Shown piece by piece: positions 24,161-53,300 of a stretch of 64,000 nt of DNA (positions within the stretch are counted from its first letter, which is position 1; every line of letters begins with the position of its first letter). The notes under the pieces are model-generated. The model made no database searches and had not been told where the DNA came from. It saw only the letters and a list, made by a program, of their open reading frames with translations. Made by a program: the position numbers and the translations under genes. The DNA comes from Macrostomum lignano (Eukaryota), in NCBI GenBank assembly GCA_002269645.1, contig NIVC01001215.1:19635-83634 (forward strand). Reading direction: 5' to 3'.

Positions 24161-26786
24161 ATGGCCGAAATTGAGAAGCTGCTCATCTGCGCTGCTGTCT
24201 TCTGTAAGCTCGAACTCCAGTGCTTATTCTATGCGGATTTTACCTACTAGATTTACAGACTCAATTTGAATAATTCTTTCCTCTTTCAGTGCTCCAGGCA
24301 AACCTGGCAAGCACCGACTGCTACAACGGCACTCACTTTAACGTCAGGCCGGGTTTTCCGACAAAAATGCCCAAGTGCACCCCGACCACGGCCGGAAATT
24401 GCTACGAGATTTTGCACAAATTCACTGAGTCTTTGGTGAGTGTTTGGTCGTATTTGCAGTGACCAACCTGCCGCTGGCTCCCCTGCACTGCTGCTGACTC
24501 CCTGCACTGCTGCTGGCTCCCCTTCACTGCTTCTGGCTCCCTGCACTGCTGCTGGCTCCCCTTCACTGCTTCTGGCTCCCTGCACTGCTGCTGGCTCCCT
24601 GCACTGCTGCTGGCTCCCTGCACTGCTGCTGGCTCCCTGCACTGCTGCTGGCTCCCTGCACTGCTGATGACTCCCCTGCACTGCTGCTTGCTCCCTGCAC
24701 TGCTGCTGGCTCCCTGCACTGCTGCTTGCTCCCTGCACTGCTGCTGGCTCCCTGCACTGCTGCTGGCTCCTCTCAAGCTCAGCTTCAACACCTGTTGATT
24801 TCAGAGACTGTTTATGGGCTGCGACAAATGCCCTGACGCAATAAAGAGCGTGAAGTACGACTTTGGAGCAAAAAAGTTAACCATTTCCGACTGCTCGGAG
24901 ACCTCCGGCTCCGGCCTGTCCAACACCAAGTGGGGGAACAAGATTAAGAGCTATGTTCTCCAATCTGAGGTCTGCTCATTTGAGGACGCAACCGGCTCGA
25001 AAGGCACCATTCTCTGCAAGCCCAAGGAGAATTGCATGGCGGCCGTCATGTCGACCACCCCGAAGGTAAGAGGGCTCAGTGAGCAGTAGGATGAGACCTG
25101 CAATAGACCTTGCAAGCCACCCTACAAGCCACTCTACAAGCCACTCTACAAGCCACCCTAAAAGGTACCCTACAAGCCACGCTACAAGGTACCTTATAAG
25201 CCACCCTACAAGCCACTCTACAAGCCACCCTACAAGCCACTCTACAAGCCACTCTACAAGCCACCCTACAAGGTACCCTACAAGCCAACCTACAAGGTAC
25301 CCTACAAGCCACCCTACAAGCCACCCTACAAGCCACCCTACAAGCCACCCTACAAGCCACTCTACAAGCCACCCTACAAGCCACTCTACAAGCCACTCTA
25401 CAAGCCACCCTAAAAGGTACCCTACAAGGTATCCTACAAGCCACCCTACAAGGTACCCTACAAGCCACCCTACAAGCCACCCTACAAGGTACCCTACAAG
25501 CCACCCTACAAGCCACCCTACAAGCCACCCTACAAGGTACCCTACAAGCCACCCTACAAGCCACCCTACAAGCCACTCTACAAGCCACCCTACAAGCCAC
25601 TCTACAAGCCACTCTACAAGCCACCCTAAAAGGTACCCTACAAGGTACCCTACAAGCCACCCTACAAGGTACCCTACAAGCCACCCTACAAGCCACCCTA
25701 CAAGGTACCCTACAAGCCACCCTACAAGCCACCCTACAAGGTACCCTACAAGCCACCCTACAAGCCACCCTACAAGGTACCCTACAAGCCACCCTACAAG
25801 CCAACCTACAAGGTACCCTACAAGCCACCCTACAAGCCAACCTACAAGGTACCCTACAAGCCACCCTACAAGCCACTCTACAAGCCACCCTACAAGCCAC
25901 TCTACAAGCCACTCTACAAGCCACCCTAAAAGGTACCCTACAAGGTATCCTACAAGCCACCCTACAAGGTACCCTACAAGCCACTCTACAAGCCACCCTA
26001 CAAGCCACTCTACAAGCCACTCTACAAGCCACCCTAAAAGGTACCCTACAAGGTATCCTACAAGCCACCCTACAAGGTACCCTACAAGCCACCCTACAAG
26101 CCACCCTACAAGGTACCCTACAAGCCACCCTACAAGCCACCCTACAAGGTACCCTACAAGCCACCCTACAAGCCACCCTACAAGCCACTCTACAAGCCAC
26201 CCTACAAGCCACCCTACAAGGTACCCTACAAGCCACCCTACAAGCCACCCTACAAGCCACCCTACAAGCCACCCTACAAGGTACCCTACAAGCCACCCTA
26301 CAAGCCACCCTACAAGCCACCCTACAAGCCACTCTACAAGCCACTCTACAAGCCACCCTACAAGCCACCCTACAAGGTACCCTACAAGCCACCCTACAAG
26401 CCACCCTACAAGCCACCCTACAAGCCACCCTACAAGCCACCCTACAAGCCACCCTACAAGCCACCCTAGAATCCACCCTACAAGCCACCCTACAAGCCAC
26501 CCTACAAGGTACCCTACAAGCCACCCTACAAGCCACCCTACAATCCACCGTACCGCCCTGCCTGCCTGTTCGGCAGAAGCGGTTCCGCGGCTGCGCCAGC
26601 AACTGCAAGGAATTCAAGCTGTCGGACTGTCGGGAGTGCAAAGAGAAAAGCTGCGACCACCCAGCGTTCGACTCGGCTGGCAATTACATAAAAAAATCCG
26701 GCGCCATGCAGCGCGCCGCCAAGACTCAAATGGCGCTCGGCGTGCTGTTCGCCGCTGCGGTTCGCTGCGTCGTGGCGCGAATTTGA
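24161..26786 (+). CDS. 219-aa secreted, probably GPI-anchored, Cys-rich Ly6/uPAR (three-finger)-like protein with two domains
   Basis: Exons 24161-24203, 24290-24435, 24805-25065 and 26577-26786 in phase. Signal peptide MAEIEKLLICAAVFLLQANLA; second domain C..C..C..RGCASNC..CRECKEKSCD; hydrophobic C-terminal tail. Confidence 0.75.
24475..24770 (+). repeat. 19-bp intronic minisatellite CCCTGCACTGCTGCTGGCT
   Basis: Tandem units inside intron 24436-24804. Confidence 0.92.
25100..26545 (+). repeat. 12-bp intronic minisatellite CCACCCTACAAG, ~1.45 kb
   Basis: Fills intron 25066-26576; source of the 535-aa and 590-aa repeat ORFs. Confidence 0.95.
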
Positions 26787-27029
26787 GCGCGCCGCTGAGA
26801 TGCGCACTGAAACGGACTCTAAAAACTTGGAATAATTTGAAAGAACTTTGAAACCCCAACTTTTTTCTCAGTTTTTTGTTTAAATAAGCCTGACTAATTT
26901 TTCAGACTACTGCAGCGAAAATCTGAAAGCATTTTAAACGAATTTCTAACTATTTCCTTTACAGTTAAAGTCGACCTCTTGCTGTTGAATTCGACTCATA
27001 CGTAACAGCCTCTCTGTAGTTAATAAACA

Positions 27030-41391: not shown

Positions 41392-44359
41392 CTACTTGGC
41401 CTCGGCCTTTGGCGGGTTGATCTTGACCACCAGCACCAGGTAGTACAGCCAGTAGAAGCAGTTGTACAGCAGGAAGCAGGCGGGAAACAGGAAGCGGCTG
41501 TACGCGTCGATGTCCGAGTCCGGCGCGGGCACTGGCGAGGCTGGCGGCGCGCCGCCTTTGCCGCCGCCACTGACGCCGCCGCCGACGCCGCCCTCTTCAA
41601 CGCTGACAGCCAGGAGATCCTCGAGCTCCTCCGGGAAGCCGGGATAGCCGTGGCCGCCGCCGATGTGGCCGCACGGCAGGCCGGGCGGCGGGCCGCGGAT
41701 GACGGCGAGGCGCTGCAGCTCGGAGCGGACGACGTTGCGGATCTCCTGCTGCCAGCTCTCCATCTTGGTGCGCCGCGCCCGGAAGGAGGCCACGGCGAAC
41801 TCGATGAGGGCGCCGATGACGAACATGATGCTGGCGATGATCCAGATGTCGATGGCCTTGATGTAGGCAACCCTGCGAAGGCGGCGGGGCAGAGGGTTAG
41901 TCAGGTAGACTGAATAAAAAAGGCACTGCAGAGCCCTGTTTGATATTTTCTGCTTTTTTCAACACAACCTCAGTGTTGTGCCCTTTTAGCAGTGTTGCAT
42001 TCTCAAGTTTATCAGTTTAGAAGTTTGCAAAAATCAGCAAATTCTCGGAGTTGAAAATCCCGATCTCTCCTCTGCAAATTGGCCTGCCGCGACGCGGTCC
42101 TTGTAGAAAAATTTCTGGGGCACAGGGCGAATTGAGAAGGCAAACTGAGCAAACTGAGTGACTCCTGAGGCTGCTTAGGCCCTGCCCTGCTCCATAAATC
42201 AGGAGCCACCACAGCAAGCAGGCTTGAAAGCTGACGAAGCCACAGGAAGAAGCAGCTTAGACACTTAATCTGAGATCAGCGGAGGGGATTTATGACGCCC
42301 TCATTCTGCACTTTCTGCCGAACTCAGCGATAGGACCAGGATTAAGCCAGACTGAGCAGCTCAGCCCAGAGTGCTGGCAGCCCCATCAACCCCGCAGCAG
42401 CCCCAGAGACTCCCCGGACTCGTGCCGTGGGCGATAAAATTGAGTTTTTAGCAGTCTTTAATCAGCCAGCGAGATCTGGCAGCCAGTGCTAATGAGAACT
42501 GCTCAGCCCGGACTCGCCGGCGCCAAGGGCTCCGTGAGGACTTTGATCTCACCGGCCTCACCCTCGATCCTTGCCCAGATTCTTTATTACTCATTGAGGC
42601 GAACAGTCAAGACCTCTTTAATCGGGCACCCTTTGTGTGAAGTTAGCGGTCGCTTAAAACAGTCGGAAAAGGAGATTCATTTGATTAATCACTTTGTAGC
42701 AGACCTGTGTGAGACCTGCAGAACTGTGTGAGACCTGCAGAACTGTGTGAGACCTGCAGACCTGTGTGAGACCCGCAGACCTGTGTGAGACCTGCAGAAC
42801 TGTGTGAGACCTGCAGAACTGTGTGAGACCTGCAGAACTGTGTGAGACCTGCAGAACTGTGTGAGACCTGCAGAACTGTGTGAGACCTGCAGAACTGTGT
42901 GAGACCTGCAGAACTGTGTGAGACCTGCAGAACTGTGTGAGACCTGCAGACCTGTGTGAGACCTGCAGAACTGTGTGAGACCTGCAGAACTGTGTGAGAC
43001 CTGCAGAACTGTGTGAGACCTGCAGAACTGTGTGAGACCTGCAGAACTGTGTGAGACCTGCAGAACTGTGTGAGACCTGCAGAACTGTGTGAGACCTGCA
43101 GAACTGTGTGAGACCTGCAGAACTGTGTGAGACCTGCAGAACTGTGTGAGACCTGCAGAACTGTGTGAGACCTGCAGAACTGTGTGAGACCTGCAGAACT
43201 GTGTGAGACCTGCAGAACTGTGTGAGACCTGCAGTCCCTCCTACCTGTGTGAGAGCTGCAGACCTGTGTGAGACCTGCAGCCCCCTCCTCCTGTTGTATC
43301 AGCACCTGCTACTTGGGCAGATTGGCCATCAAGGTAGATGCCTAGGAGAGTCTGCAGTCCCTACCTGGGCAGGTTGGCCATCACGGTGGATGCCTGGGTG
43401 AGGATACCCAACAGGGTGAGCAGGCCCAGCGTAACCCGAGCGGGCACGGCTTCTATATTGACCCAGAAGCTGAGCCAGCTGACGGCAATGATGAGGATGG
43501 CGGGGATGTAGGTGCCGGCCAGGTAGCTGCTCAGCTGCCGCTCCAGCTTGAAGATCGCCTTCAGGCACGCGTAGCTCCCTGTGCTGGTCGCGCTGCCCTG
43601 CGTGCAGTCCTCCACAATGGCGAAGTCGGGTGTGTTGAACTCGGAAATCTGCATGGAGCCGTCCAGCTCCACCGGGTCTTTCAACCCGTCCCGCTTCCAC
43701 TTGAACAGCAGGTTCCTCGTGGTGTATCCGTAGCTGCCGATGTTCACGAAGCACGTCTGTGTGTCCATGGGAAATGTCTGCAACTGCATCTGGCACGAGA
43801 ACTTCATGGTAACCTTCTGCGAATACAGGATCTGCCCGTCGGGCTCAACTCTGATCAGATAGTTAGGCTGAGTCATGGTGTGCAGGTAACCCTCCTTTCC
43901 ATTACGGAAGAACAGGTCTGGAAGCCACAGGTGCTCCTTCTTGGCGGGGATGGCGATGGACTCGTTGTAGAAACTGAAGTCTTTGCGATGATCCCAGCGC
44001 AGCCGCGTGTCCTTCCAGAACTGACGCAGGTACATGTCCAGCGTAAACTCCATGTTGATGACGTCCACCTTGTTGATGCTGAGAATCTTCATGTTGACGT
44101 CCACGGCCGTGGATGGCTGCACCGGCTTGCTGGAGCCGGACACGTCTGGGGCGGGCTCAGCCGGCTGGCCGTCCGGCTTCGGCGGCATCTCCACCGGCCG
44201 CTGGTGCTTATTGTAGCCGCGGAAGATCGCCTCCACGATGCGGTCCACGATGTTGGTGTAGTTCGGCCGAACTGACCCGCTGGTCGGCTGAATCTCCTCG
44301 GTGGCGAACACAGCAGCGACCGCCAGCAGGGCTGGCAGCAGGCGGCACCAAAAGTGCAT
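41392..44359 (-). CDS. Anion-selective Cys-loop receptor subunit A (GluCl/glycine-receptor-like), 491 aa
   Basis: Exon 1, 44359-43365: signal peptide, WLPDLFF, Cys loop CQMQLQTFPMDTQTC, SYGYT, TM1, PAR-TM2. Exon 2, 41872-41392: VAYIKAIDIW TM3 and IDAYSRFLFPACFLLYNCFYW TM4. Phase-2 junction CCC AG|G. Confidence 0.93.
42705..43270 (+). repeat. 19-bp intronic minisatellite CTGTGTGAGACCTGCAGAA
   Basis: Tandem units in the channel intron. Confidence 0.95.
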
Positions 44360-45184
44360 CGCGATCGGCCTATGGCTGGCTCTCGATGCTCTCCTCTCCG
44401 GCTGTCTCTGCGCTCTCCTGGGAGCGGCTATCGGCAAGTGCGAGGCTGGGAGCAGGAATTGTCAGCACCTGCCAGCCCGGGCTAATGGGAGCAGAGCAGC
44501 TTAGCTCCCAGCTCAAATGCCGGTAGCGGTGAGCCAGGAGGACATGCGGGGCTGCAGTCGCTATTTGAGTATTTCCTATATCTGTTCTGGGGATCAGTCT
44601 CGCGCAAACAACACTCTTATCCGCTTCCCATTTTCCTCTCCCGCTCATTCTCTTCCCTGGCCTTTGGTAGCCAATGACCGCAGCGGCTCGGCGAGCCGGC
44701 TTTAATCCGGCCTGCCCCGGCCCGGTTTCATTATCCCTGGCCTCTGCCCCGCATTGTCAGCAGCCACACCGGCCGGCCATTAGAGCCCCACCGCTGCCAG
44801 GCAGACAACAGCAGCAGAGTGAGTCCGCACTGCCACTTCCTCACTCTGAGTGGTGAGCTGCAGCTCAGCCCAGCCTCTCTTATCTGCGCTCAGCAACTCC
44901 GGGTCTGACTGGATTCGGCCAAAAAGCTCCCATATTACTTTAATCAATTTGGCGCATGCGATCCCCGCTGGAGCAAATTGTCAAGCAATTTGGCACCAAT
45001 TCAGGGCTGGGCGACTGTCGATGCGAGAGAGACTGAACCGACTTTTGCCGGTGTTGGACCTGCAGCTCATCAGCCTGTTCCACACCTGGGTTCCTGGGGA
45101 CCGGGTTTTGAGGAGCTTCTGCTAAGCAAATTACTTAATTGAATTAAATTTTCTAAATGATCTGTAGCTCAACCGAAGAGCTGA

Positions 45185-46678
45185 GTACAGCACGCAACCA
45201 TAGACATGGAACACTGTGTACAGCACGCAACCATAGACATGGAACACTGTGTACAGCACGCAACCATAGACATGGAACACTGTGTACAGCACGCAACCAT
45301 AGACATGGAACACTGTGCACAGCACACAATCATAGACCTGGAGCAGTGTACAGCACACAATCATAGACCTGGAACAGTGTACAGCACACAATCATAGACC
45401 TGGAACAGTGTACAGCACACAACCATAGACCTGGAACAGTGTACAGCACACAACCATAGACATGGAACAGTGTACAGCACACAACCATAGACCTGGAACA
45501 GTGTACAGCACACAATCATAGACCTGGAACAGTGTACAGCACACAACCATAGACCTGGAACAGTGTACAGCACACAATCATAGACATGGAACAGTGTACA
45601 GCACACAACCATAGACATGGAACAGTGTACAGCACACAATCATAGACATGGAACACTGTGTACAGCACGCAACCATAGACATGGAACACTGTGCACAGCA
45701 CACAATCATAGACATGGAACACTGTGTACAGCACAAAACCATAGACATGGAACACTGTGCACAGCACACAATCATAGACATGGAACACTGTGTACAGCAC
45801 AAAACCATAGACATGGAACACTGTGTACAGCACACAATCATAGACATGGAACACTGTGTACAGCACAAAACCATAGACATGGAACACTGTGCACAGCACA
45901 CAATCATAGACATGGAACACTGTGCACAGCACACAATCATAGACATGGAACACTGTGCACAGCACACAATCATAGACCTGAACACTGTGTACAGCACACA
46001 ATCATAGACATGGAACACTGTGTACAGCACACAACCATAGACATGGAACACTGTGTACAGCACACAACCATAGACATGGAACACTGTGTACAGCACGCAA
46101 CCATAGACATGGAACACTGTGTACAGCACACAACCATAGACATGGAACACTGTGTACAGCACGCAACCATAGACATGGAACACTGTGTACAGCACACAAT
46201 CATAGACATGGAACACTGTGTACAGCACACAATCATAGACATGGAACACTGTGTACAGCACACAACCATAGACATGGAACACTGTGCACAGCACACAATC
46301 ATAGACATGGAACACTGTGTACAGCACACAACCATAGACATGGAACACTGTGCACAGCACACAATCATAGACATGGAACACTGTGCACAGCACACAATCA
46401 TAGACCTGAACACTGTGCACAGCACACAATCATAGACATGGAACACTGTGTACAGCACACAACCATAGACATGGAACACTGTGCACAGCACACAATCATA
46501 GACATGGAACACTGTGCACAGCACACAATCATAGACCTGAACACTGTGTACAGCACACAATCATAGACATGGAACACTGTGCACAGCACACAATCATAGA
46601 CATGGAACACTGTGTACAGCACACAACCATAGACATGGAACACAGTGCACAGCACACAATCATAGACCTGAACACTGT
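45185..46678 (+). repeat. 31/33-bp minisatellite CATAGACATGGAACACTGTGTACAGCACACAAT, ~1.5 kb
   Basis: Tandem units with two length variants. Confidence 0.95.
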
Positions 46679-47639
46679 AAGAATCGTCGGAGAGTCAAAC
46701 CTTCCCTCTTTGAAAATGAAAAAAAATTCCATATCTGAATGGTCCGCACAAGCCTTTAACTAAAAATTAAGCTTCTTACACGCTGGTGCATTTAAAAATC
46801 CAGTGAATTTTCAACCAAGCAGACTACTTACAGTAGAATGAGTAGCAAAGCCGGTGGCTCAGGGGACTTCAGTAGGAAGCATTGAAATGCTTCATTCTGA
46901 GCAGTCCAGCTCACACAGGCAGAGTGCATGAGTAGGACTTTGCTTTCTTCAACGAACTACTTGCTGTTTAATTTCGATAATTGGCTAGGCTTTGGCTAGA
47001 GCGGTACAGTTGAGCTTATTCCAATGCACTTCATTTTGCGCACGGGCTGATTGAGCATTTCATAAATTCATGATTATTGACCTGTGGTCGAACTGATGCA
47101 TGAAACAGCTGTTTGCAGCTGCTGTACCGTAGTCGGTGCAGAACTGCCCCAGGTCTTGAATTCCATGTCGAATCTCGTCGCTTATTGAGTGCCCGGGGAT
47201 TAAAAATCAGGGTGAAAGGAGAGTTGAATCCATTGGGACAGGGACTGAACCAATGGATTTTGCCATTCTCATTTTAAGCTCAAAAGCGGAACAGCTCCTA
47301 CATAGTGAGCACTTTCTTCAAGAATTTTTGGAAAAACGTTTTGCTAGTGGTCCTCGTCTATTTTAATCCAGAGCAACGAGTCCCATAGCTTTGAAGAGGT
47401 GAAGTTGCTTCTGGAATATTTGCAGTTCATGCGACCCTGTCACGAGAACAGGTAGGAATAAATGGCAACAGAGTAACAGAGACAGCTTTTCAAATTCTAA
47501 ATGATTTAGAGTGCATCTATTTTTAGAAATTAAATCAACCGAATCCTCAGCAAGTGGCCACTGATTTTGGAGGCTGCGCAAGTCAAAGCCCGCAGTTACC
47601 GAAACCAACGCCTCCACAAAGTACACTCTGCCCTCACTG

Positions 47640-48150
47640 TGTGATGAGATGGTGTGGAGTGAGCAGAGTGTGATGAGATGGAGCAGTGAGCAGTGTGATG
47701 AGATAGAACAGTAAGCAGAGTGTGATGAGATGGTGGGGTGAGCAGAGTGTGATGATGGTGGGGTGAGCAGAGTGTGATGAGATGGTGGAATGAGCAGAGT
47801 GTGATGAGACGGTGGAGTGAGCAGGGTGTGATGAGATGGTGTGGAGTGAGCAGTGTGATGAGATGGAGCAGTGAGCAGTGTGATGAGATAGAACAGTGAG
47901 CAGAGTGTGATGAGATGGTGGGGTGAGCAGAGTGTGATGAGATGGTGGAATGAGCAGAGTGTGATGAGATGGTGGAATGAGCAGAGTGTGATGAGATGCT
48001 GGAGGGCGGGGAGAGGAGATGGAGCAGTGAGCAGTGTGATGAGATAGAACAGTGAGCAGAGTGTGATGAGATGGTGGGGTGAGCAGAGTGTGATGAGATG
48101 GTGGAATGAGCAGAGTGTGATGAGATGCTGGAGGGCGGGGAGAGGAGATG
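47640..48150 (+). repeat. ~27-bp degenerate minisatellite (GTGTGATGAGATGGTGGGGTGAGCAGA)
   Basis: Tandem units visible directly. Confidence 0.88.
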
Positions 48151-49084
48151 CAGGAGACGGGAGAAGGGGATGCAAACATAGGATGGTGCGTGAGAGATGA
48201 TGTGGGATGAAAAGTGAACATAATTGGCGTCTGGATTTTAACGGCGCAGAGAAATCGGCAAGGAGTTTCAGATCCCACCGCTCTGATCCCGCACAAGACG
48301 GATTAGGAGAGCGCCATGACGGAGCCAAGGGGATAATCTGGCCTGAGCTTTCCCTGCCTCTTCTCGAAAAAGAGGCCCTCAAAGGGGATTCGGATATTAA
48401 AAGATGAAAAGCGGGGCTTTGAGCACAGTTCTCATCGGAGCTGAAATTAATAGGCAATCGCAACAGCCGTCAGCCTGCATGTTCAGAAGGCACTCAAGAA
48501 GCGAATGCGTCTTGAAGCTTGTGTCTTTCTAGAGGAAAAGCTCCTCAAAGGTTTGCAGAGGCCAGATGAAAAAACTGAGCTTGGCTGTTTTGATGCATTT
48601 ATGGAGAAACTGGGCCGTTTCCGGCGACAGTCCGGCGCAGGGCGCGGCTTTCTGACCGCCTACAGCTGGGATTCGGGCGGCCCACCTGGCTTGCATAAAT
48701 AATGATTTGAGATCGCACTGGTGGGCTCTCTTCACCTGTCCCCGTGAGAAAGAAGGCTCAGCCTGAGGATTAGGGCCGCTTCTGAACTTATGCAGCCGCG
48801 GATTGAGGAGGGAATGAAGATGCCGAGAGAGGCTGGGTGAGTAAGCGGAGAGGAGCTGGATTTCTAGATATCGGGTGAGCTGAGCACCACAAGCTCTGGG
48901 CCTGAGCCCGCGAAACGGGCGCATGACTTGCTGACAGGGCAAGACTGAAAACTGGCATGAGAGACCGCAGTGAGCAGACTGGATGGGCACTTTCAGTGAG
49001 CCGTCAAATGCTCAAAAAGGGCACCAATTAAGAAATAAAAGTAACCTCAATTTTCTTGAAAACAGCTGACTAAGAATGGCCTAC

Positions 49085-50028
49085 CTGGGCAGGTTGTTGA
49101 TGACTGACATGCCCTGGGTGAGGATGCCCAGCAGGGTGAGCAGGCCCAGGGAGACCCTGGCTGGCACGGCTTCAATACTGATCCAGAAGTTGAGCCAAGA
49201 GACCGCCACGATGAGGATGGCGGGGATGTAGGTACCGGATAGGTAGCTGCCCAGCTGCCGCTCCAGCTTGAAGATCGCCTTCAGGCACGCGTAGCTCCCT
49301 GTGCTGGTCGCGCTGCCCTGAGTGCAGTCGTGGCTCTCAGCAAAGTCGGGCGCGTTGAACTCGGAAATCTGCATGGAGCCGTCCAGCTCCACCGGGTCTT
49401 TCAGCCCGTCCCGCTTCCACTTGAACAGCAGGTTCCTCGTGGTGTATCCGTAGCTGCCGATGTTCACGAAGCACGTCTGCGTGTCCATGGGAAACGTCTG
49501 CAACTGCATCTGGCACGAGAACTTCATGGTAACCTTCTGCGAATACAGGATCTGCCCGTCGGGCTCAACTCTGATCAGATAGTTAGGCTGAGTCATTTTG
49601 TGCAGGTAACCCTCCTTTCCATTACGGAAGAACAGGTCTGGAAGCCACAGGTGCTCCTTCTTGGCGGGGATGGCGATGGACTCGTTGTAGAAACTGAAGT
49701 CTTTGTAATGATCCCAGCGTAGCCGCGTGTCCTTCCAGAACTGACGCAGGTACATGTCCAGCGTAAACTCCATGTTGATGACGTCCACCTTGTTGATGCT
49801 GAGAATCTTCATGTTGACGTCCACGTCGGTCGAATCCTCTTCTATGGTGCCGTCCGGCTTCTGCCGGCTAGCGGGCACGGGCCGCTGGTGTTTGTTGTAG
49901 CCGCGGAAGATGTGGAACACGATGCGGTCCACGATGTTCGTGTAGTTGGGTGCGGCGCCGCAGTCCGCAACCTGCACCCAGGCCAGCAGAACGGCCAACA
50001 GAACCAGGAGCAGCCGCGCTGGCGCCAT
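49085..50028 (-). CDS. Cys-loop anion-channel subunit B, first exon only (signal peptide, ECD, TM1, TM2); no private TM3-TM4 exon found
   Basis: 944-nt exon ending NLP AG|gtag in the same phase as subunit A exon 1; near-identical to A across the central ECD. Confidence 0.88.
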
Positions 50029-50034
50029 CTCGGG

Positions 50035-50385
50035 CGCCTTAGACGGAGACTAGCGGCTTCTGCTGGCGCGATCGCGGGCGCCTCAGACGGAGGCTAGCGG
50101 CTTCTGCTGGCGCGATCGCGGGCGCCTCAGATGGAGACTAGCGGCTTCTGCTGGCACGATCGCGGGCGCCTCAGATGGAGACTAGCGGCTTCTGCTGGCA
50201 CGATCGCGGGCGCCTCAGATGGAGACTAGCGGCTTCTGCTGGCGCGATCGCGGGCGCCTCAGACGGAGGCTAGCGGCTTCTGCTGGCGCGATCGCGGGCG
50301 CCTCAGACGGAGGCTAGCGGCTTCTGCTGGCGCGATCGCGGGCGCCTCAGACGGAGGCTAGCGGCTTCTGCTGGCGCGATCGCGG
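50035..50385 (-). repeat. 44-bp GC-rich tandem repeat (~8 copies) immediately upstream of the subunit B start codon
   Basis: ctagcggcttctgctggcgcgatcgcgggcgcctcagacggagg recurs at 50050, 50094, 50138 and so on. Confidence 0.93.
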
Positions 50386-53300
50386 GCCCCGACGCCCATG
50401 CGGCTTTGGTCGGCTGGAGGCCTCGCTGCAACTGCCGCACAGAGGACGGAAAACCCTGGGACCAGGCCGGTGATCCGAGCTGTCGGTGTCTGAATTCCCG
50501 CTGAAACTTTGGATGGCCGTGCTAATTCGGTGGCGCTCGGGTGGGCCGAATTCCAACTCTCTGAAGTATCAGCCCGCGGGGACTGGCGTACAGCCGTTCA
50601 GCTCGCTTGTGCGCAAAGGCTTGGCGAGGCTGCTATGGACGGGTCACGGGCTGAGTTGCTGCAGAAGGCCGCGGGAGAATCCCCCTCTGGGAGGGGCTGC
50701 AGAGCAGCGCGGGCCTGCTCGGCTCCCATTGGCCCGCTAGACTGTTTAGGGATGAACGGTCGGAGGTGAGGTGGCGCTCACGCAGGGAAACCGGTGCGAT
50801 CCGGAGCGGACGGGCAGGGTCTCCCCTTGCCCTCTGTCCCCCCAGCGAGCGGTCGCCACAACCCGCCTTCCCATTGTTGTTGCAGTGATCGATGGCTCAG
50901 TGGGAAACTCGCAGCAGAATCTGAGAACTCAGTGTTAGTGCAAAGCCTGAGGGAGCTGTTCATGCTATGCTGAATTTTTTTTGCTCAGCAGAAAGCCAGC
51001 AAGGTGCCTTGTATTCAGTTTCGACGCAGGAAGACAGTTGGATACAGATGGCGCAGCTGAATTCCTGGAACAAGGCAGCTGGGAAATTCTTGCTTATCTG
51101 CAGAGTACTCCCTAATGGTTCTGTGTTCTGCCTGGCCGGCACCTCAGCCCCAGCCTCTCCTAACACCCCTAAAAGATTCGCAGCCTGACAGGCAAACAAG
51201 AGAAAGATTATTCAAGCGACAATCCCCTCCCGCAAGAGGAATGCAGCCGGCAGGAAGTCGTCCGCATAAGGCGGGAGAAGCCAATTAGCAAAGCCCTGAC
51301 GACAGATTCTCGCGGACTGGGAACCAGCACAACGAAGTCGGCAACAGGCAGGTCTGGCACTTTTCGCTGGAGCCCTTGGCATGTTAGCGCAGAGTCAGAC
51401 ACGATCCGCAGTTTCTCCTAGCCGACGCGGTGCGCTTTCAGTAGCGGTCACCCTTCGGTGCACTTTTACTACTAATGCATTTAGTCCACGGGCCGGGTGG
51501 CTCCAGCGAGCGGTAAAGCCGAAATAATTGAATAATTATTGCCGCTCAGGCCGACCACCTCGAGCTAGTTTGAGCAGCTGAGCTTTATCGCACTGATTTC
51601 ATTAGTTCCCCGAAACCCCAGACTTGCACTTTTGTCTCCATTGTTGGTCTCGGCTTTTACACAGGCTTTGGCCACAAGCTCATAGCGCGCTTCTACATCA
51701 AGGATTAATCGAGACCGATGACTTTCAGCAGAGCCAGGCTCATGCGGACCGAGCGCCGAGCAGAAGAAAATGAAGCACCGACAGTCATAAGGAGAGCTGC
51801 ATGACCCGTGGCATGAAATTAATATTGAAGCCCGCCGTGCCATACGGAGTCGAATGGCAGCGAAGGGGGCCTAGCGCTGCTCGTACTTTCACTCTGTTTG
51901 CCAGCCCGGGTGGGGCGGCGGAAGAGTCGCGAAGGCTGCTGCGATTCCCCCCTCCCTCAGGAATCTCTTTGGCCGCCTGCCCTGCCCTGCTGCTCCGGAG
52001 AAACCTCAGCCCTCTCCCGGGCCAGCGCACCCAACTTTGAATTTGAGGCCTGCCGGGAGACTCAGAGGCAAGTGGGAGTGGCAGCATGCAGCCCACTCCC
52101 TGTTCATCTATCCCAGCCTGCTCACGGCGACACGCGAGTTGCCTCCCCCTCCGAAGTCCCAGACTAGCGGACCACTGCGGGAACACCGGCAGCGCGCTGG
52201 AGTGACGGTCTCTAGTAATAGGTCGCTTGCCCTCCCCAAGAAGCTGCCTGTGCCTCTTCCACTTTCTCCTAGTTTCTGTCTGTCTGTCTTCTCAAACTCT
52301 CGAGCTACAGATCATGCAAGAGCAGAGATCGGTAAATTAGCCCGCGCTCGGCCATCACGATGGGGCAGCTTTAAAAGTCCCATCAGTCTTAGGCGGGAGA
52401 TTCTCCAAAGAGATTCCGATCATAGCAGCTACTCTAGGAACGAAAAATTGCTCTGCCCGCCCATGCATTGAGAAAGCGTTTTTGAGCATGAGAACTCATT
52501 TTAAAGCTGAGAGCCTTCAGAGAGCTCCTCCGTCTTTCACGTCTCCTACACTACAAAAATCCTTGAGTCGATGTGGGCGTAATTTGCTCCGAGATAGAGT
52601 CAGCCGCATGCTTAGCCAGCCCTGCGAGTTATAAAAGTTTGCATCTTCATCACGCAGTCCTGAGCGGCGTTCGCGATGAAGTTAATCCCAATTTGCTTTG
52701 AGGCTGGCGGCCCGCCCCGGGCGAAGTTGTCACTAATCTGCTCCCGATTTCAGCTTAATCCGGCGGCCTCACCCCAGGGACACAGGGGATGGGGCGGAAC
52801 TTCAGGGGACAGAAAAGCTGATGAGAATTTCTGAGCCCCTCACGAGTCTCTGGACTCGTTGGTTGAGAGAAAGTGCAGCACAGCGGCTTCAAAATTTTCT
52901 CCCGGCGTGAATTCCGGCTGGAGCTGCGAGCCACTTCAACACGAGAGCAACCCGACACCCCCTGCTCAGAGCACCGGACTCAAACAAGGCAACGGCTTCG
53001 CTCAAGAGGGACATGGGCTATAATTTGTATTTTTGCCGAAATAACTGACTGTGAATTCAAAAGAAATCTACTAATAAGAATTCTGCACGACTTGAAGGCG
53101 CTGCAACTCGAGAGGGAGCTCAGCAAGATCCCGTGATGCCTGCTCTCAACTTATGACACACAATCGGATTAACTCGCTGCATCGGACTAGAGGCTCTGGA
53201 ATCCAAGCATCATCTACCCCTCAGCTGCAGCCGCTGTGGAGGCCTATTTCTCTGCCTGTCTCAGCTGCCCCTCTCTCGCACCCGCGACAGAGGAGGGAAG

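What the first reader, a model, noticed from the sequence alone, without database searches (positions are those of the whole stretch)
41392..50028. Two complete channel first exons, one TM3-TM4 exon: protocadherin/UGT1A-like variable-constant design in a Cys-loop receptor
Seen: exons 50028-49085 and 44359-43365 each encode their own signal peptide, full ligand-binding domain, TM1 and pore-lining TM2. Both end at the same junction (NLP AG|gtag, phase 2). The only TM3/TM4 exon I can find is 41872-41392; reading 44500-49080 shows no YxKAIDxW-like exon. Known: clustered protocadherins and UGT1A splice alternative first exons to shared constant exons; I know no such design for pentameric channels. 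Inference: promoter choice selects ECD plus pore while the intracellular loop and TM3-4 stay constant.
Basis: partly seen in the sequence, partly recalled or inferred. Interest (0 to 1): 0.78.

Follow-up and report, generated by a model that had tools for sequence, protein, structure and literature searches.

The report
Two-headed flatworm chloride-channel gene
In the flatworm Macrostomum lignano, one glutamate-gated-chloride-channel-type gene has two alternative large first exons, each encoding its own ligand-binding domain and pore helix, and a single shared exon for the last two membrane helices; the public RNA-based annotation already joins the far exon to the shared exon.

Summary
On the minus strand there are two paralogous ORF exons: B (50028-49085) and A (44359-43365). 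Each encodes a signal peptide, the ligand-binding domain, M1 and M2. Both end at CCCAG|GTAG in phase 2. The 64-kb window holds only one M3-loop-M4 exon, C (41872-41392).

The window is Macrostomum lignano assembly Mlig_3_7, contig NIVC01001215.1. The exact B+C protein (474 aa) is already in GenBank as PAA70662.1/PAA71747.1, and its CDS spans 50028-41392. That annotation was built only from RNA-seq and transcript assemblies.

The unproven junction is A-to-C. No A+C protein is on record. A is nevertheless intact in all four copies I could read, and it differs between duplicated genome copies almost only at synonymous sites.

A and B exchange sequence by gene conversion in a 480-nt core. They stay distinct in the N-terminal segment, the strand before loop C, and M1-M2.

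Best reading: a minimal cluster of two variable first exons and one constant exon, in a flatworm GluCl-type subunit. This mirrors C. elegans unc-49 and avr-14. Promoter choice is inferred. It is a new variant of a known kind.

The parts
49085..50028 (-). Variable first exon B. It starts at ATG 50028 and encodes a signal peptide, the ligand-binding domain, M1 and M2. It ends in phase 2 at CCCAG; the donor GT is at 49084-49083.
   Evidence: It is identical to residues 1-314 of GenBank PAA70662.1 (P0121) and PAA70668.1 (P0001).
43365..44359 (-). Variable first exon A. It starts at ATG 44359 and encodes its own signal peptide, the ligand-binding domain, M1 and M2. It ends at the same CCCAG|GTAG junction; the donor GT is at 43364-43363.
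   Evidence: It is intact in all four copies read: window, L001, and L002 twice.
41392..41872 (-). Constant exon C. It holds 1 nt completing the Arg codon, then M3 (YIKAIDIW...), the intracellular loop, M4 (YSRFLFPACF...) and the stop TAG at 41394-41392. The acceptor AG is at 41874-41873.
   Evidence: It is the only M3/M4 exon in the 64-kb window. It forms residues 315-474 of PAA70662.1.
41873..49084 (-). The 7,212-nt intron removed in the annotated B+C mRNA. It contains the whole of exon A.
   Evidence: The CDS span of P0121 in L003, 10001-18637, equals window 50028-41392.
41873..43364 (-). The 1,492-nt intron of the inferred A+C mRNA. It contains a 19-nt minisatellite of 28 copies at 42699-43234.
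   Evidence: The junction is inferred, not observed.
43625..44105 (-). Core of exon A (beta1 to beta8/9 of the ligand-binding domain). It is homogenised with exon B by gene conversion.
   Evidence: dS is 0.06 here against 0.44-0.64 in the flanks. Only 2 differences are fixed between all A and all B copies; the rest are shared polymorphisms.
49345..49825 (-). The matching conversion tract in exon B.
50018..50387 (-). A 44-nt minisatellite (8.4 copies) abutting exon B. B's ATG and first codons lie in its last, mutated unit (ATC changed to ATG).
45181..46678 (-). A 33-nt minisatellite (46 copies) between B and A. It is the breakpoint of the rearrangements seen in the other two copies of the locus.

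Best explanation
This locus encodes a flatworm-type ('S-like') glutamate-gated chloride-channel subunit of Macrostomum lignano. It is built as two variable first exons and one constant exon.

Each variable exon, B upstream and A downstream, is one large ORF. Each carries its own start codon, a signal peptide, the whole extracellular ligand-binding domain, M1 and the pore helix M2. Each ends at the same phase-2 donor in the M2-M3 linker. Neither needs an acceptor. The single downstream exon C supplies M3, the intracellular loop and M4.

A transcript that starts at B splices B's donor over 7.2 kb, skipping A, to C's acceptor and gives B+C. A transcript that starts between B and A splices A's donor over 1.5 kb to the same acceptor and gives A+C. 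The result is two subunits with the same M3-loop-M4. They differ in the N-terminal segment, the beta9 strand leading into loop C, M1, and M2 positions 2', 15'-17', 19' and 20'. They would therefore probably differ in agonist pharmacology, gating or conductance, and assembly partners.

The two exons arose by duplication of the first exon only. A 480-nt core is kept nearly identical by ongoing A/B gene conversion, while the flanking segments are kept different.

**Shown:** the anatomy; the B+C product in an RNA-derived annotation; purifying selection on A, B and C; the conversion tract.

**Inferred:** the A-to-C junction; separate transcription starts; glutamate gating; functional differences between the isoforms.
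For: **Anatomy.**
- Two ECD-M1-M2 exons share one junction and phase. There is one M3/M4 exon in 64 kb.

**B-to-C junction.**
- The window is 100% identical over 28,637 nt to NIVC01001215.1.
- The exact 474-aa B+C protein is PAA70662.1/PAA71747.1. Its CDS spans window 50028-41392.
- The annotation came from STAR/StringTie/TACO, BLAT-mapped de novo transcripts and TransDecoder, with no ab initio prediction (PMC5730564).
- Only 12 nt upstream of the two donors are identical. A junction read assigned to B must therefore carry B-specific bases (inference).
- In a second copy of the locus, a retrotransposon sits between B and A. There the annotated mRNA joins B's donor to a cryptic acceptor inside the element (P0001). 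This shows B's donor is active and takes an acceptor that lies upstream of exon C when the element supplies one.

**Selection: window copy versus the duplicated copy L002.**
- B: 6 nt differences, all synonymous.
- C: 4 nt differences, all synonymous.
- A: 10-11 nt differences with one amino-acid change.
- Roughly 2% of non-coding bases around exon C are mismatched between these copies.
- For A, 9 synonymous events against 1 non-synonymous has a binomial P of about 1e-5, taking 77% non-synonymous sites (my calculation).
- The 4 differences in A-specific segments, which cannot be copied from B, are all synonymous.

**State of A and B.**
- A's M1-M2 residues are mostly the family consensus: I291, S297, V300, A323. 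B's residues match the M. lignano paralogue P0028.
- Neither exon breaks an invariant column.
- A versus B in M1-M2: dS 0.44, dN/dS 0.33.
- Homology between A and B starts inside the ORF and stops exactly at the donor. This is expected for an old duplicate kept only by coding constraint.
Against: - No A+C protein is on record. The exact look-up failed, and no cluster representative above 83% identity to A appeared in the search.
- The only A-containing model on record is a 261-aa call in copy L001 that ends at a +1-frame stop.
- TACO's isoform-frac setting of 0.75 could hide a minor A+C isoform. Equally, A may simply not be expressed.
- I saw no reads, so B-to-C rests on one pipeline. The two annotated loci may reflect the same multi-mapped transcripts.
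- No transcription start or promoter for A is shown. Upstream regions of A and B share only one 22-nt inverted match (E 0.004).
- One copy of the locus tolerates a retrotransposon 8 nt upstream of A's ATG.
- Gene conversion from B could keep part of A intact without selection on A itself.
Confidence: 0.6

Rival explanations
1. Only B+C is a working gene. Exon A is an intronic relic of the duplication that is always skipped. It looks intact because it is young and because gene conversion from B keeps repairing it.
For: - No A+C product is in GenBank or the protein collection.
- The window copy has only the B+C CDS on record.
- A/B conversion is ongoing: A's two polymorphic residues, R126Y and T161K, switch to B's state.
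- A retrotransposon lies 8 nt from A's ATG in one copy.
Against: - The A-specific segments (signal peptide and N-terminus, beta9, M1-M2) cannot be repaired from B. They remain open, keep family-consensus residues, and show 4 synonymous and 0 non-synonymous differences between copies.
- The donor GTAGG is kept in all four A copies.
- In L002 the A-C block was duplicated as a unit.
- A/B divergence in the flanks (dS 0.44-0.64) implies enough time for a dead exon to decay.
Confidence: 0.22
2. A+C is the real gene. B is a truncated upstream duplicate, and its annotated join to C is splicing noise or a pipeline artefact.
For: - A is adjacent to C (1.5-kb intron) and has the more canonical M2.
- In L002 the A-C block behaves as a unit.
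- B's start codon was recruited from a minisatellite.
- B also appears in an aberrant model joined to a transposon.
Against: - The RNA-derived annotation contains B+C and not A+C.
- Between copies B has 0 and 6 nt differences with no amino-acid change, while the flanking non-coding DNA differs by about 1-2% in the same alignments.
- B's M1-M2 is nearly identical to that of a second M. lignano paralogue (P0028), which indicates a conserved subunit type.
Confidence: 0.08
3. Assembly artefact. There are really two complete tandem genes, and B's own M3-M4 exon was collapsed or lost in the repeat-rich interval.
For: - The B-A interval holds two large minisatellites.
- The assembly is redundant and rearranged at these repeats (PMC5730564).
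Against: - Three separately assembled copies all show B followed by A with no M3/M4 exon between them.
- The copy with an extra C (L002) has it after A, not after B.
- The annotated mRNA uses exon C.
Confidence: 0.05
4. One promoter upstream of B drives everything. A is reached by spliced-leader trans-splicing to an acceptor just upstream of its ATG, so the choice is made by the splicing machinery and not by promoter choice.
For: - 38.8% of M. lignano genes are trans-spliced, and about 7% of transcripts are polycistronic precursors (PMC5730564).
- Acceptor-like sites (Y-tract plus AG) lie 86 and 58 nt upstream of A's ATG.
Against: - With B's donor upstream, such an acceptor should be used in cis. 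The annotated B+C skips it.
- No trans-splice evidence was available to me.
Confidence: 0.05

Closest known systems
Multiple-variable-first-exon clusters: vertebrate UGT1A, clustered protocadherins, GCNT2 (PMC1885805, PMC3325998)
   Same: - Tandem paralogous, unusually large first exons of similar length and the same reading frame.
- Each first exon has its own start codon and signal sequence and encodes the recognition domain.
- Each is spliced to shared downstream constant exon(s).
- As in protocadherins, gene conversion homogenises part of the variable exons while other parts stay diverse.
   Different: - There are only two variable exons and one constant exon.
- The animal is a flatworm; those clusters were described as vertebrate-specific.
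- The product is a pentameric ion-channel subunit, and the variable part includes the pore helix.
- Separate promoters and the second junction (A-C) are not shown here.
C. elegans unc-49 GABA-receptor locus (Bamber et al. 1999, as summarised in PMC6920096)
   Same: One Cys-loop receptor locus yields several distinct subunits by joining a shared block to alternative blocks.
   Different: It is the mirror image. In unc-49 the shared part is the N-terminal extracellular block, and the alternatives are 3' blocks carrying the binding-site remainder and all transmembrane helices. Here the alternatives are 5' and the shared part is M3-loop-M4.
Nematode avr-14 (gbr-2) GluCl alpha3A/3B (PMC8841521)
   Same: A glutamate-gated chloride-channel gene gives two subunits from one locus.
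   Different: The isoforms share the N-terminus and differ in the channel and intracellular C-terminal region. They arise by alternative 3' splicing, not alternative first exons.
Schistosoma mansoni SmGluCl-2 / SmGluCl-3 (flatworm GluCl clade; PMC3757052, PMC4338433)
   Same: - These are the closest characterised proteins: 50% identity to SmGluCl-2 isoform 2 (P0022).
- Both have two Cys loops.
- Both have the P(-2') A(-1') T(13') anion motif.
- Both have the Loop A arginine in WLPDLFFRNGK.
- Both have intron-poor genes.
   Different: [quoted passage not shown] The Macrostomum gene has an intron in the M2-M3 linker and a duplicated first exon. Its gating by glutamate has not been tested.

Membership tests
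Cys-loop (pentameric) ligand-gated ion channel subunit | Neur_chan_LBD plus Neur_chan_memb domains | tested here: met
   Pfam hits for A+C and B+C: LBD E 8e-44 and 2e-45; membrane domain E 4e-27 and 1e-26.
Cys-loop (pentameric) ligand-gated ion channel subunit | Cys-x13-Cys loop and four transmembrane helices M1-M4 | tested here: met
   CQMQLQTFPMDTQTC is present in both A and B; C189 and C203 are invariant in 43 homologues. M1-M2 lie in A and B, and M3/M4 motifs lie in C. The full set exists only in the spliced products.
Flatworm ('S-like') glutamate-gated chloride channel clade | Closest relatives are flatworm GluCl subunits | tested here: met
   Hits are almost all Platyhelminthes at 44-56% identity, including SmGluCl-2 isoform 2 at 50%. 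No tree was built.
Flatworm ('S-like') glutamate-gated chloride channel clade | Glutamate-binding motif with the Loop A arginine, and the second Cys pair in loop C (PMC4338433) | tested here: met
   R152 in FFRNGK, R112 in LRQ, the GSYGY motif, T258/T260/Y263 and C252/C265 are invariant in the alignment and present in both A and B. Assignment of these residues to loops follows the paper's description and is my inference.
Flatworm ('S-like') glutamate-gated chloride channel clade | Anion-selectivity residues at M2 -2', -1' and 13' (PMC3757052) | tested here: met
   PAR...T is present in both A (PARVTLGLLTLLGILTQ) and B (PARVSLGLLTLLGILTQ).
Flatworm ('S-like') glutamate-gated chloride channel clade | Channel opened by L-glutamate | not testable with these tools
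   This needs expression in oocytes or cultured cells.
Multiple-variable-first-exon / constant-exon cluster (UGT1A, Pcdh type) | Tandem paralogous large first exons, each with its own ATG and signal sequence, in the same reading frame | tested here: met
   Signal peptides were judged by eye (hydrophobic cores LLLVLLAVLLAWV and LLPALLAVAAVFA), not by a predictor.
Multiple-variable-first-exon / constant-exon cluster (UGT1A, Pcdh type) | A single shared set of downstream constant exon(s) | tested here: met
   There is one M3/M4 exon in 64 kb. The same order is seen in two other copies.
Multiple-variable-first-exon / constant-exon cluster (UGT1A, Pcdh type) | Every variable exon is spliced to the constant exon in mature mRNA | tested here: inconclusive
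   B-C is present in the RNA-derived GenBank annotation. A-C is not on record. Reads were not available to me.
Multiple-variable-first-exon / constant-exon cluster (UGT1A, Pcdh type) | [quoted passage not shown] | not testable with these tools
   There are no 5'-end data. No convincing shared upstream motif was found.
unc-49 / avr-14 type multi-subunit locus | Shared N-terminal exons joined to alternative C-terminal channel blocks | tested here: not met
   The polarity is reversed here: alternative 5' blocks and a shared 3' block.

The most novel reading that the evidence does not exclude
A pentameric ligand-gated channel locus diversifies its subunits by choosing between first exons that carry the entire ligand-binding domain and pore helix, on a constant M3-loop-M4 scaffold. 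Gene conversion holds the structural core constant, and selection keeps the loop-C stem and M2 different. This would be a protocadherin/UGT1A-style logic not previously described for this receptor superfamily. It may be used more widely in Macrostomum: the paralogue P0028 also has a first exon ending at ...NNLP with no annotated M3-M4.
Probability: 0.5. Interest if true: 0.65.

Novelty: new variant of a known kind. Interest (0 to 1): 0.55.

Why it matters
If both isoforms are made, one locus gives two channel subunits. They would have different agonist-site and pore residues but an identical intracellular loop and M3/M4. The cell could then change what the receptor senses and how it conducts, without changing the part that normally handles trafficking, clustering and lipid contacts.

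It would be a natural domain-swap experiment at the M2-M3 linker, and the mirror image of unc-49. It would also extend the variable-first-exon design, described as vertebrate-specific for the UGT1, GCNT2 and UGT2A clusters, to an invertebrate ion channel.

There are practical points too:
- Flatworm GluCls are candidate anthelmintic targets.
- M. lignano is transgenic-ready, so isoform-specific reporters and knock-downs are feasible.
- Annotators should note that A is currently unannotated.
- The older annotations of this family in M. lignano end at the M2-M3 junction.

Tried and rejected
- **Spliced A+C and B+C in the look-up of encoding contigs.** The exact look-up through the listing of cluster members worked instead.
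- **Unspliced read-through products of A (332 aa) and B (315 aa).** Neither is on record.
- **Genomic context of the paralogue P0028.** It is not on record. I could not test whether that locus has the same design.
- **P0001's 67-aa tail.** At first it looked like a private exon for B. It is absent from the window. It lies in a tyrosine-recombinase retrotransposon present only in another copy of the locus. I rejected it as a genuine C-terminus.
- **P0102** (older ML2 annotation). This is a frameshifted model of exon B that reads through the 44-nt minisatellite and into intron sequence at 47635-47533. It is uninformative.
- **The 261-aa 'A' gene call in L001.** Its span is 13 nt longer than a 261-codon CDS plus stop, and it ends at a +1-frame TGA. 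I could not recover the sequence. It is weak evidence for A transcription at best.
- **Pairs of Logan transcripts sharing a C-terminus.** I considered searching the homologues for such pairs, but ran no systematic comparison. No M. lignano Logan transcripts of this gene appear among the search hits or the cluster members read.
- **A promoter motif shared by A and B.** I found only a 22-nt inverted match (E 0.004) and short chance matches.
- **Bacterial promoter/terminator scans, tRNA and Rfam tools.** I did not use them because they are irrelevant to this metazoan locus.

Full report
**1. What is in the sequence**

Three coding blocks lie on the minus strand.
- Exon B (50028-49085) and exon A (44359-43365) are each a single open reading frame.
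- Each starts at an ATG followed by a hydrophobic signal-like segment. Each then runs through a complete Cys-loop ligand-binding domain, M1 and M2, and stops at CCCAG|GTAG, two bases into a codon.
- Exon C (41872-41392) follows cttcgcag|G. It completes an Arg codon and encodes VAYIKAIDIW (M3), a Gly/Pro-rich loop, DAYSRFLFPACF...(M4) and a stop.
- A+C is 491 aa and B+C is 474 aa. Both hit Pfam Neur_chan_LBD and Neur_chan_memb.
- tblastn with exon C finds no second M3/M4 exon anywhere in the 64-kb window: the only hit has E 1e-104, and the next has E 0.4.
- A six-frame motif scan finds the ECD and M2 motifs twice and the M3 and M4 motifs once.

**2. Where the window comes from, and what is already annotated**

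- The best protein hit, P0001, is Macrostomum lignano BOX15_Mlig026840g2.
- The window is 100% identical over 28,637 nt to GenBank NIVC01001215.1 of assembly Mlig_3_7 (GCA_002269645.1). Record coordinate = window + 19634.
- An exact-sequence look-up shows the 474-aa B+C protein is already deposited as PAA70662.1 and PAA71747.1 (BOX15_Mlig000841g2/g5; UniRef100_A0A267FF10).
- Its CDS in this contig spans exactly window 50028-41392.
- The search had hidden it, because it is a non-representative member of P0001's 90% cluster.

The Mlig_3_7 annotation used no ab initio prediction. It was built from STAR-mapped RNA-seq assembled with StringTie and TACO, BLAT-mapped de novo transcripts, and TransDecoder (PMC5730564).

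The two donors share only 12 identical bases upstream of the junction. A junction assigned to B therefore needs B-specific read sequence. This is my inference about the aligner, not something I checked.

**3. The other copies of the locus**

M. lignano is a recent polyploid with a redundant assembly. I read two more copies.

*L001* (same contig, inverted, about 98.8% identical):
- It carries a 4.2-kb retroelement with reverse transcriptase and tyrosine-recombinase domains.
- The element sits 8 nt upstream of A's ATG.
- There the annotated mRNA (P0001) joins B's donor to an AG inside the element at L001 16312/16313. This gives a 67-aa out-of-frame tail.
- That explains P0001's odd C-terminus. 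It also shows that B's donor is active and takes an acceptor upstream of exon C when the element supplies one.

*L002* (contig NIVC01001142.1):
- Its order is B-A-C-A-C, with the A-C block duplicated as a unit.
- Its annotated CDS again gives the identical B+C protein.

No copy has an M3/M4 exon between B and A. This argues against a lost private exon.

**4. Are both first exons functional?**

*Differences between the window and the other copies*

| Comparison | Exon B | Exon C | Exon A |
|---|---|---|---|
| Window vs L002 | 6 nt, all synonymous | 4 nt, all synonymous | 10-11 nt, one amino-acid change (T161K) |
| Window vs L001 | identical | identical | 7 nt, one amino-acid change (R126Y) |

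- Non-coding DNA differs by about 2% in mismatches in the alignment block around exon C.
- With about 77% non-synonymous sites, 9 synonymous events against 1 non-synonymous in A has a binomial P of about 1e-5 (my calculation).
- Both amino-acid changes in A switch to B's residue.
- In the 480-nt core, only 2 differences are fixed between all A copies and all B copies. The others are shared polymorphisms. A and B are therefore exchanging sequence by gene conversion.
- That could keep the core of A intact without selection on A. However, the four differences in A-specific segments are also all synonymous.

*A compared with B*
- Homology begins inside the ORF at PNYTNIV and ends exactly at the donor. 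The flanking DNA is unrelated.
- The core has dS 0.06. The N-terminal part has dS 0.64, and M1-M2 has dS 0.44 with dN/dS 0.33.

*A and B compared with 40 flatworm homologues*
- Neither exon breaks a conserved column in a way unique to itself.
- A's M1-M2 residues are mostly the family consensus.
- B's match a second M. lignano paralogue, P0028.

I conclude that both exons are under coding constraint. A truncated ECD-M1-M2 product is an unlikely target of such constraint. C is the only available M3-M4. So A-to-C splicing is the economical inference, but it is not observed:
- No A+C protein is on record.
- The unspliced ORFs are not on record either.
- The only A-containing model is a 261-aa call in L001 that ends at a +1-frame stop.
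- TACO's isoform-frac setting of 0.75 would discard a minor isoform. Absence from the annotation is therefore weak evidence.

**5. What the two isoforms would differ in**

Both keep the following features:
- the Cys loop and the second Cys pair in loop C;
- the Loop A arginine and other residues of the flatworm glutamate motif (PMC4338433);
- the anion-selectivity residues P(-2'), A(-1') and T(13') (PMC3757052).

They differ in these places (M2 prime numbering is my count from the Arg of PAR):
- the signal peptide and the loop after helix 1;
- the beta9 segment just before loop C (PDFAIVED in A, PDFAESHD in B);
- several M1 positions;
- M2 positions 2' (T/S), 15' (A/G), 16' (S/M), 17' (T/S), 19' (M/I) and 20' (A/N).

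These positions commonly affect agonist sensitivity, channel block and gating in this superfamily. That is my general knowledge and was not tested here.

**6. Mechanism I commit to**

The locus uses alternative first exons. Transcripts that begin at B use B's donor and the only acceptor, C, and skip A, which has no used acceptor. Transcripts that begin between B and A use A's donor and the same acceptor.

My probabilities:
- B-C is real: about 0.85-0.9.
- A-C is also made: about 0.65-0.7.
- Given both, separate transcription starts rather than trans-splicing: about 0.75.

A trans-splicing route is conceivable. Spliced-leader trans-splicing is common in this species, and acceptor-like sites lie 86 and 58 nt upstream of A's ATG. 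The annotated B+C skips them.

**7. Comparison with what is known**

- The design matches the defining layout of multiple-variable-first-exon clusters (UGT1A, protocadherins, GCNT2). Those have large tandem first exons in one reading frame, each with a signal sequence and a recognition domain, each preceded by its own promoter, and each spliced to shared constant exons (PMC1885805, PMC3325998).
- As in protocadherins, gene conversion homogenises part of the variable exons.
- Two defining features are untested or incomplete here: one promoter per exon, and the A-C junction.
- Within Cys-loop receptors the nearest precedents are unc-49 and avr-14. These share the N-terminal part and alternate the channel part. 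That is the reverse polarity, so this locus is not a member of that type.
- By protein family it belongs with the flatworm GluCl clade: 50% identity to SmGluCl-2. [quoted passage not shown]
- No paper in the searchable library contains both 'alternative first exon' and 'Cys-loop'. That is an absence in one library, not proof.

**8. Verdict**

The anatomy is real. B+C is already in GenBank, though apparently unremarked. The two-isoform design is likely but half-proven. This is a new variant of a known kind, of moderate interest to channel and flatworm biologists. It can be settled cheaply by counting junction reads in existing RNA-seq.

Noticed in passing
window 50018-50387 (minus strand), with B's ATG at 50028-50026: B's start codon and first four or so codons lie inside the last unit of a 44-nt minisatellite. 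The unit reads ...GCGATCGCGCCAGC, and the last copy reads ...GAGATGGCGCCAGC. The start of the signal peptide seems to have been recruited from repeat DNA by an ATC-to-ATG change.
   Followed up: partly
L001 16131-20385 (NIVC01001215.1, the other, inverted copy of the locus): A 4.2-kb retroelement is inserted 8 nt upstream of A's ATG. It has a SAP-like gag ORF, RVT_1 (E 7e-17) and a Phage_integrase-type tyrosine recombinase (E 1e-5). The 33-nt minisatellite and A's upstream region are duplicated alongside it. GenBank protein PAA70668.1 is exon B spliced to a cryptic acceptor inside this element.
   Followed up: yes
L002 5044-19308 (NIVC01001142.1): This third copy has the order B-A-C-A-C. The block matching window ~46091-40365 is tandemly duplicated with its junction in the 33-nt minisatellite. 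The annotated CDS runs from B to the second C.
   Followed up: partly
NIVC01001215.1, about 51-116 kb (the window is record 19635-83634): The window copy and the L001 copy lie head to head on one contig, with the B start codons about 30 kb apart. They are about 98.8% identical and each has its own thioredoxin/glutaredoxin and aldolase-II neighbours. This may be a real inverted duplication or a join of homeologous sequence.
   Followed up: no
window 44417-44360 (minus strand): An acceptor-like site (CCGCTCCCAG|) lies 58 nt upstream of A's ATG. If B's phase-2 donor used it, the 20 intervening codons are open and in frame with A. That would give a B-linker-A-C tandem protein. A second site at -86 nt gives a stop before the ATG. 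No transcript evidence supports either, and this may be chance (ORF 43361-44437).
   Followed up: no
window 43350-43315 (minus strand): A decayed partial copy of the last ~30 nt of exon A (ccttGATGGCCAATCTGCCCAAGTAG) sits about 15 nt downstream of A's donor, just before the 19-nt minisatellite.
   Followed up: no
window 49084-49079 and 43364-43359 (minus strand): Both donors read AG|GTAG, so an unspliced transcript of either exon ends ...NLPR-stop immediately after M2. Retained-intron RNAs would encode ECD-M1-M2 only.
   Followed up: partly
Proteins P0028, P0122 and P0123 (M. lignano, UniProt, older ML2 assembly): A second M. lignano paralogue, 71% identical, has an M1-M2 almost identical to B's. 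All three of its models end with unrelated tails right after ...NNLP(R). Its M3-M4 exon is therefore also distant or shared, and the design may recur elsewhere in the genome.
   Followed up: partly
window 42699-43234, 45181-46678 and 47639-48133: Three large minisatellites lie in the introns: a 19-nt unit x28, a 33-nt unit x46 and a 27/79-nt unit. The 33-nt array is the breakpoint for the structural differences among the three copies.
   Followed up: partly
window 25079-26851 (plus strand): A 590-aa ORF is made of PT disordered repeats (Pfam PF04886, E 5e-60). This may be a low-complexity repeat protein or a repeat artefact, and is unrelated to the channel gene.
   Followed up: no
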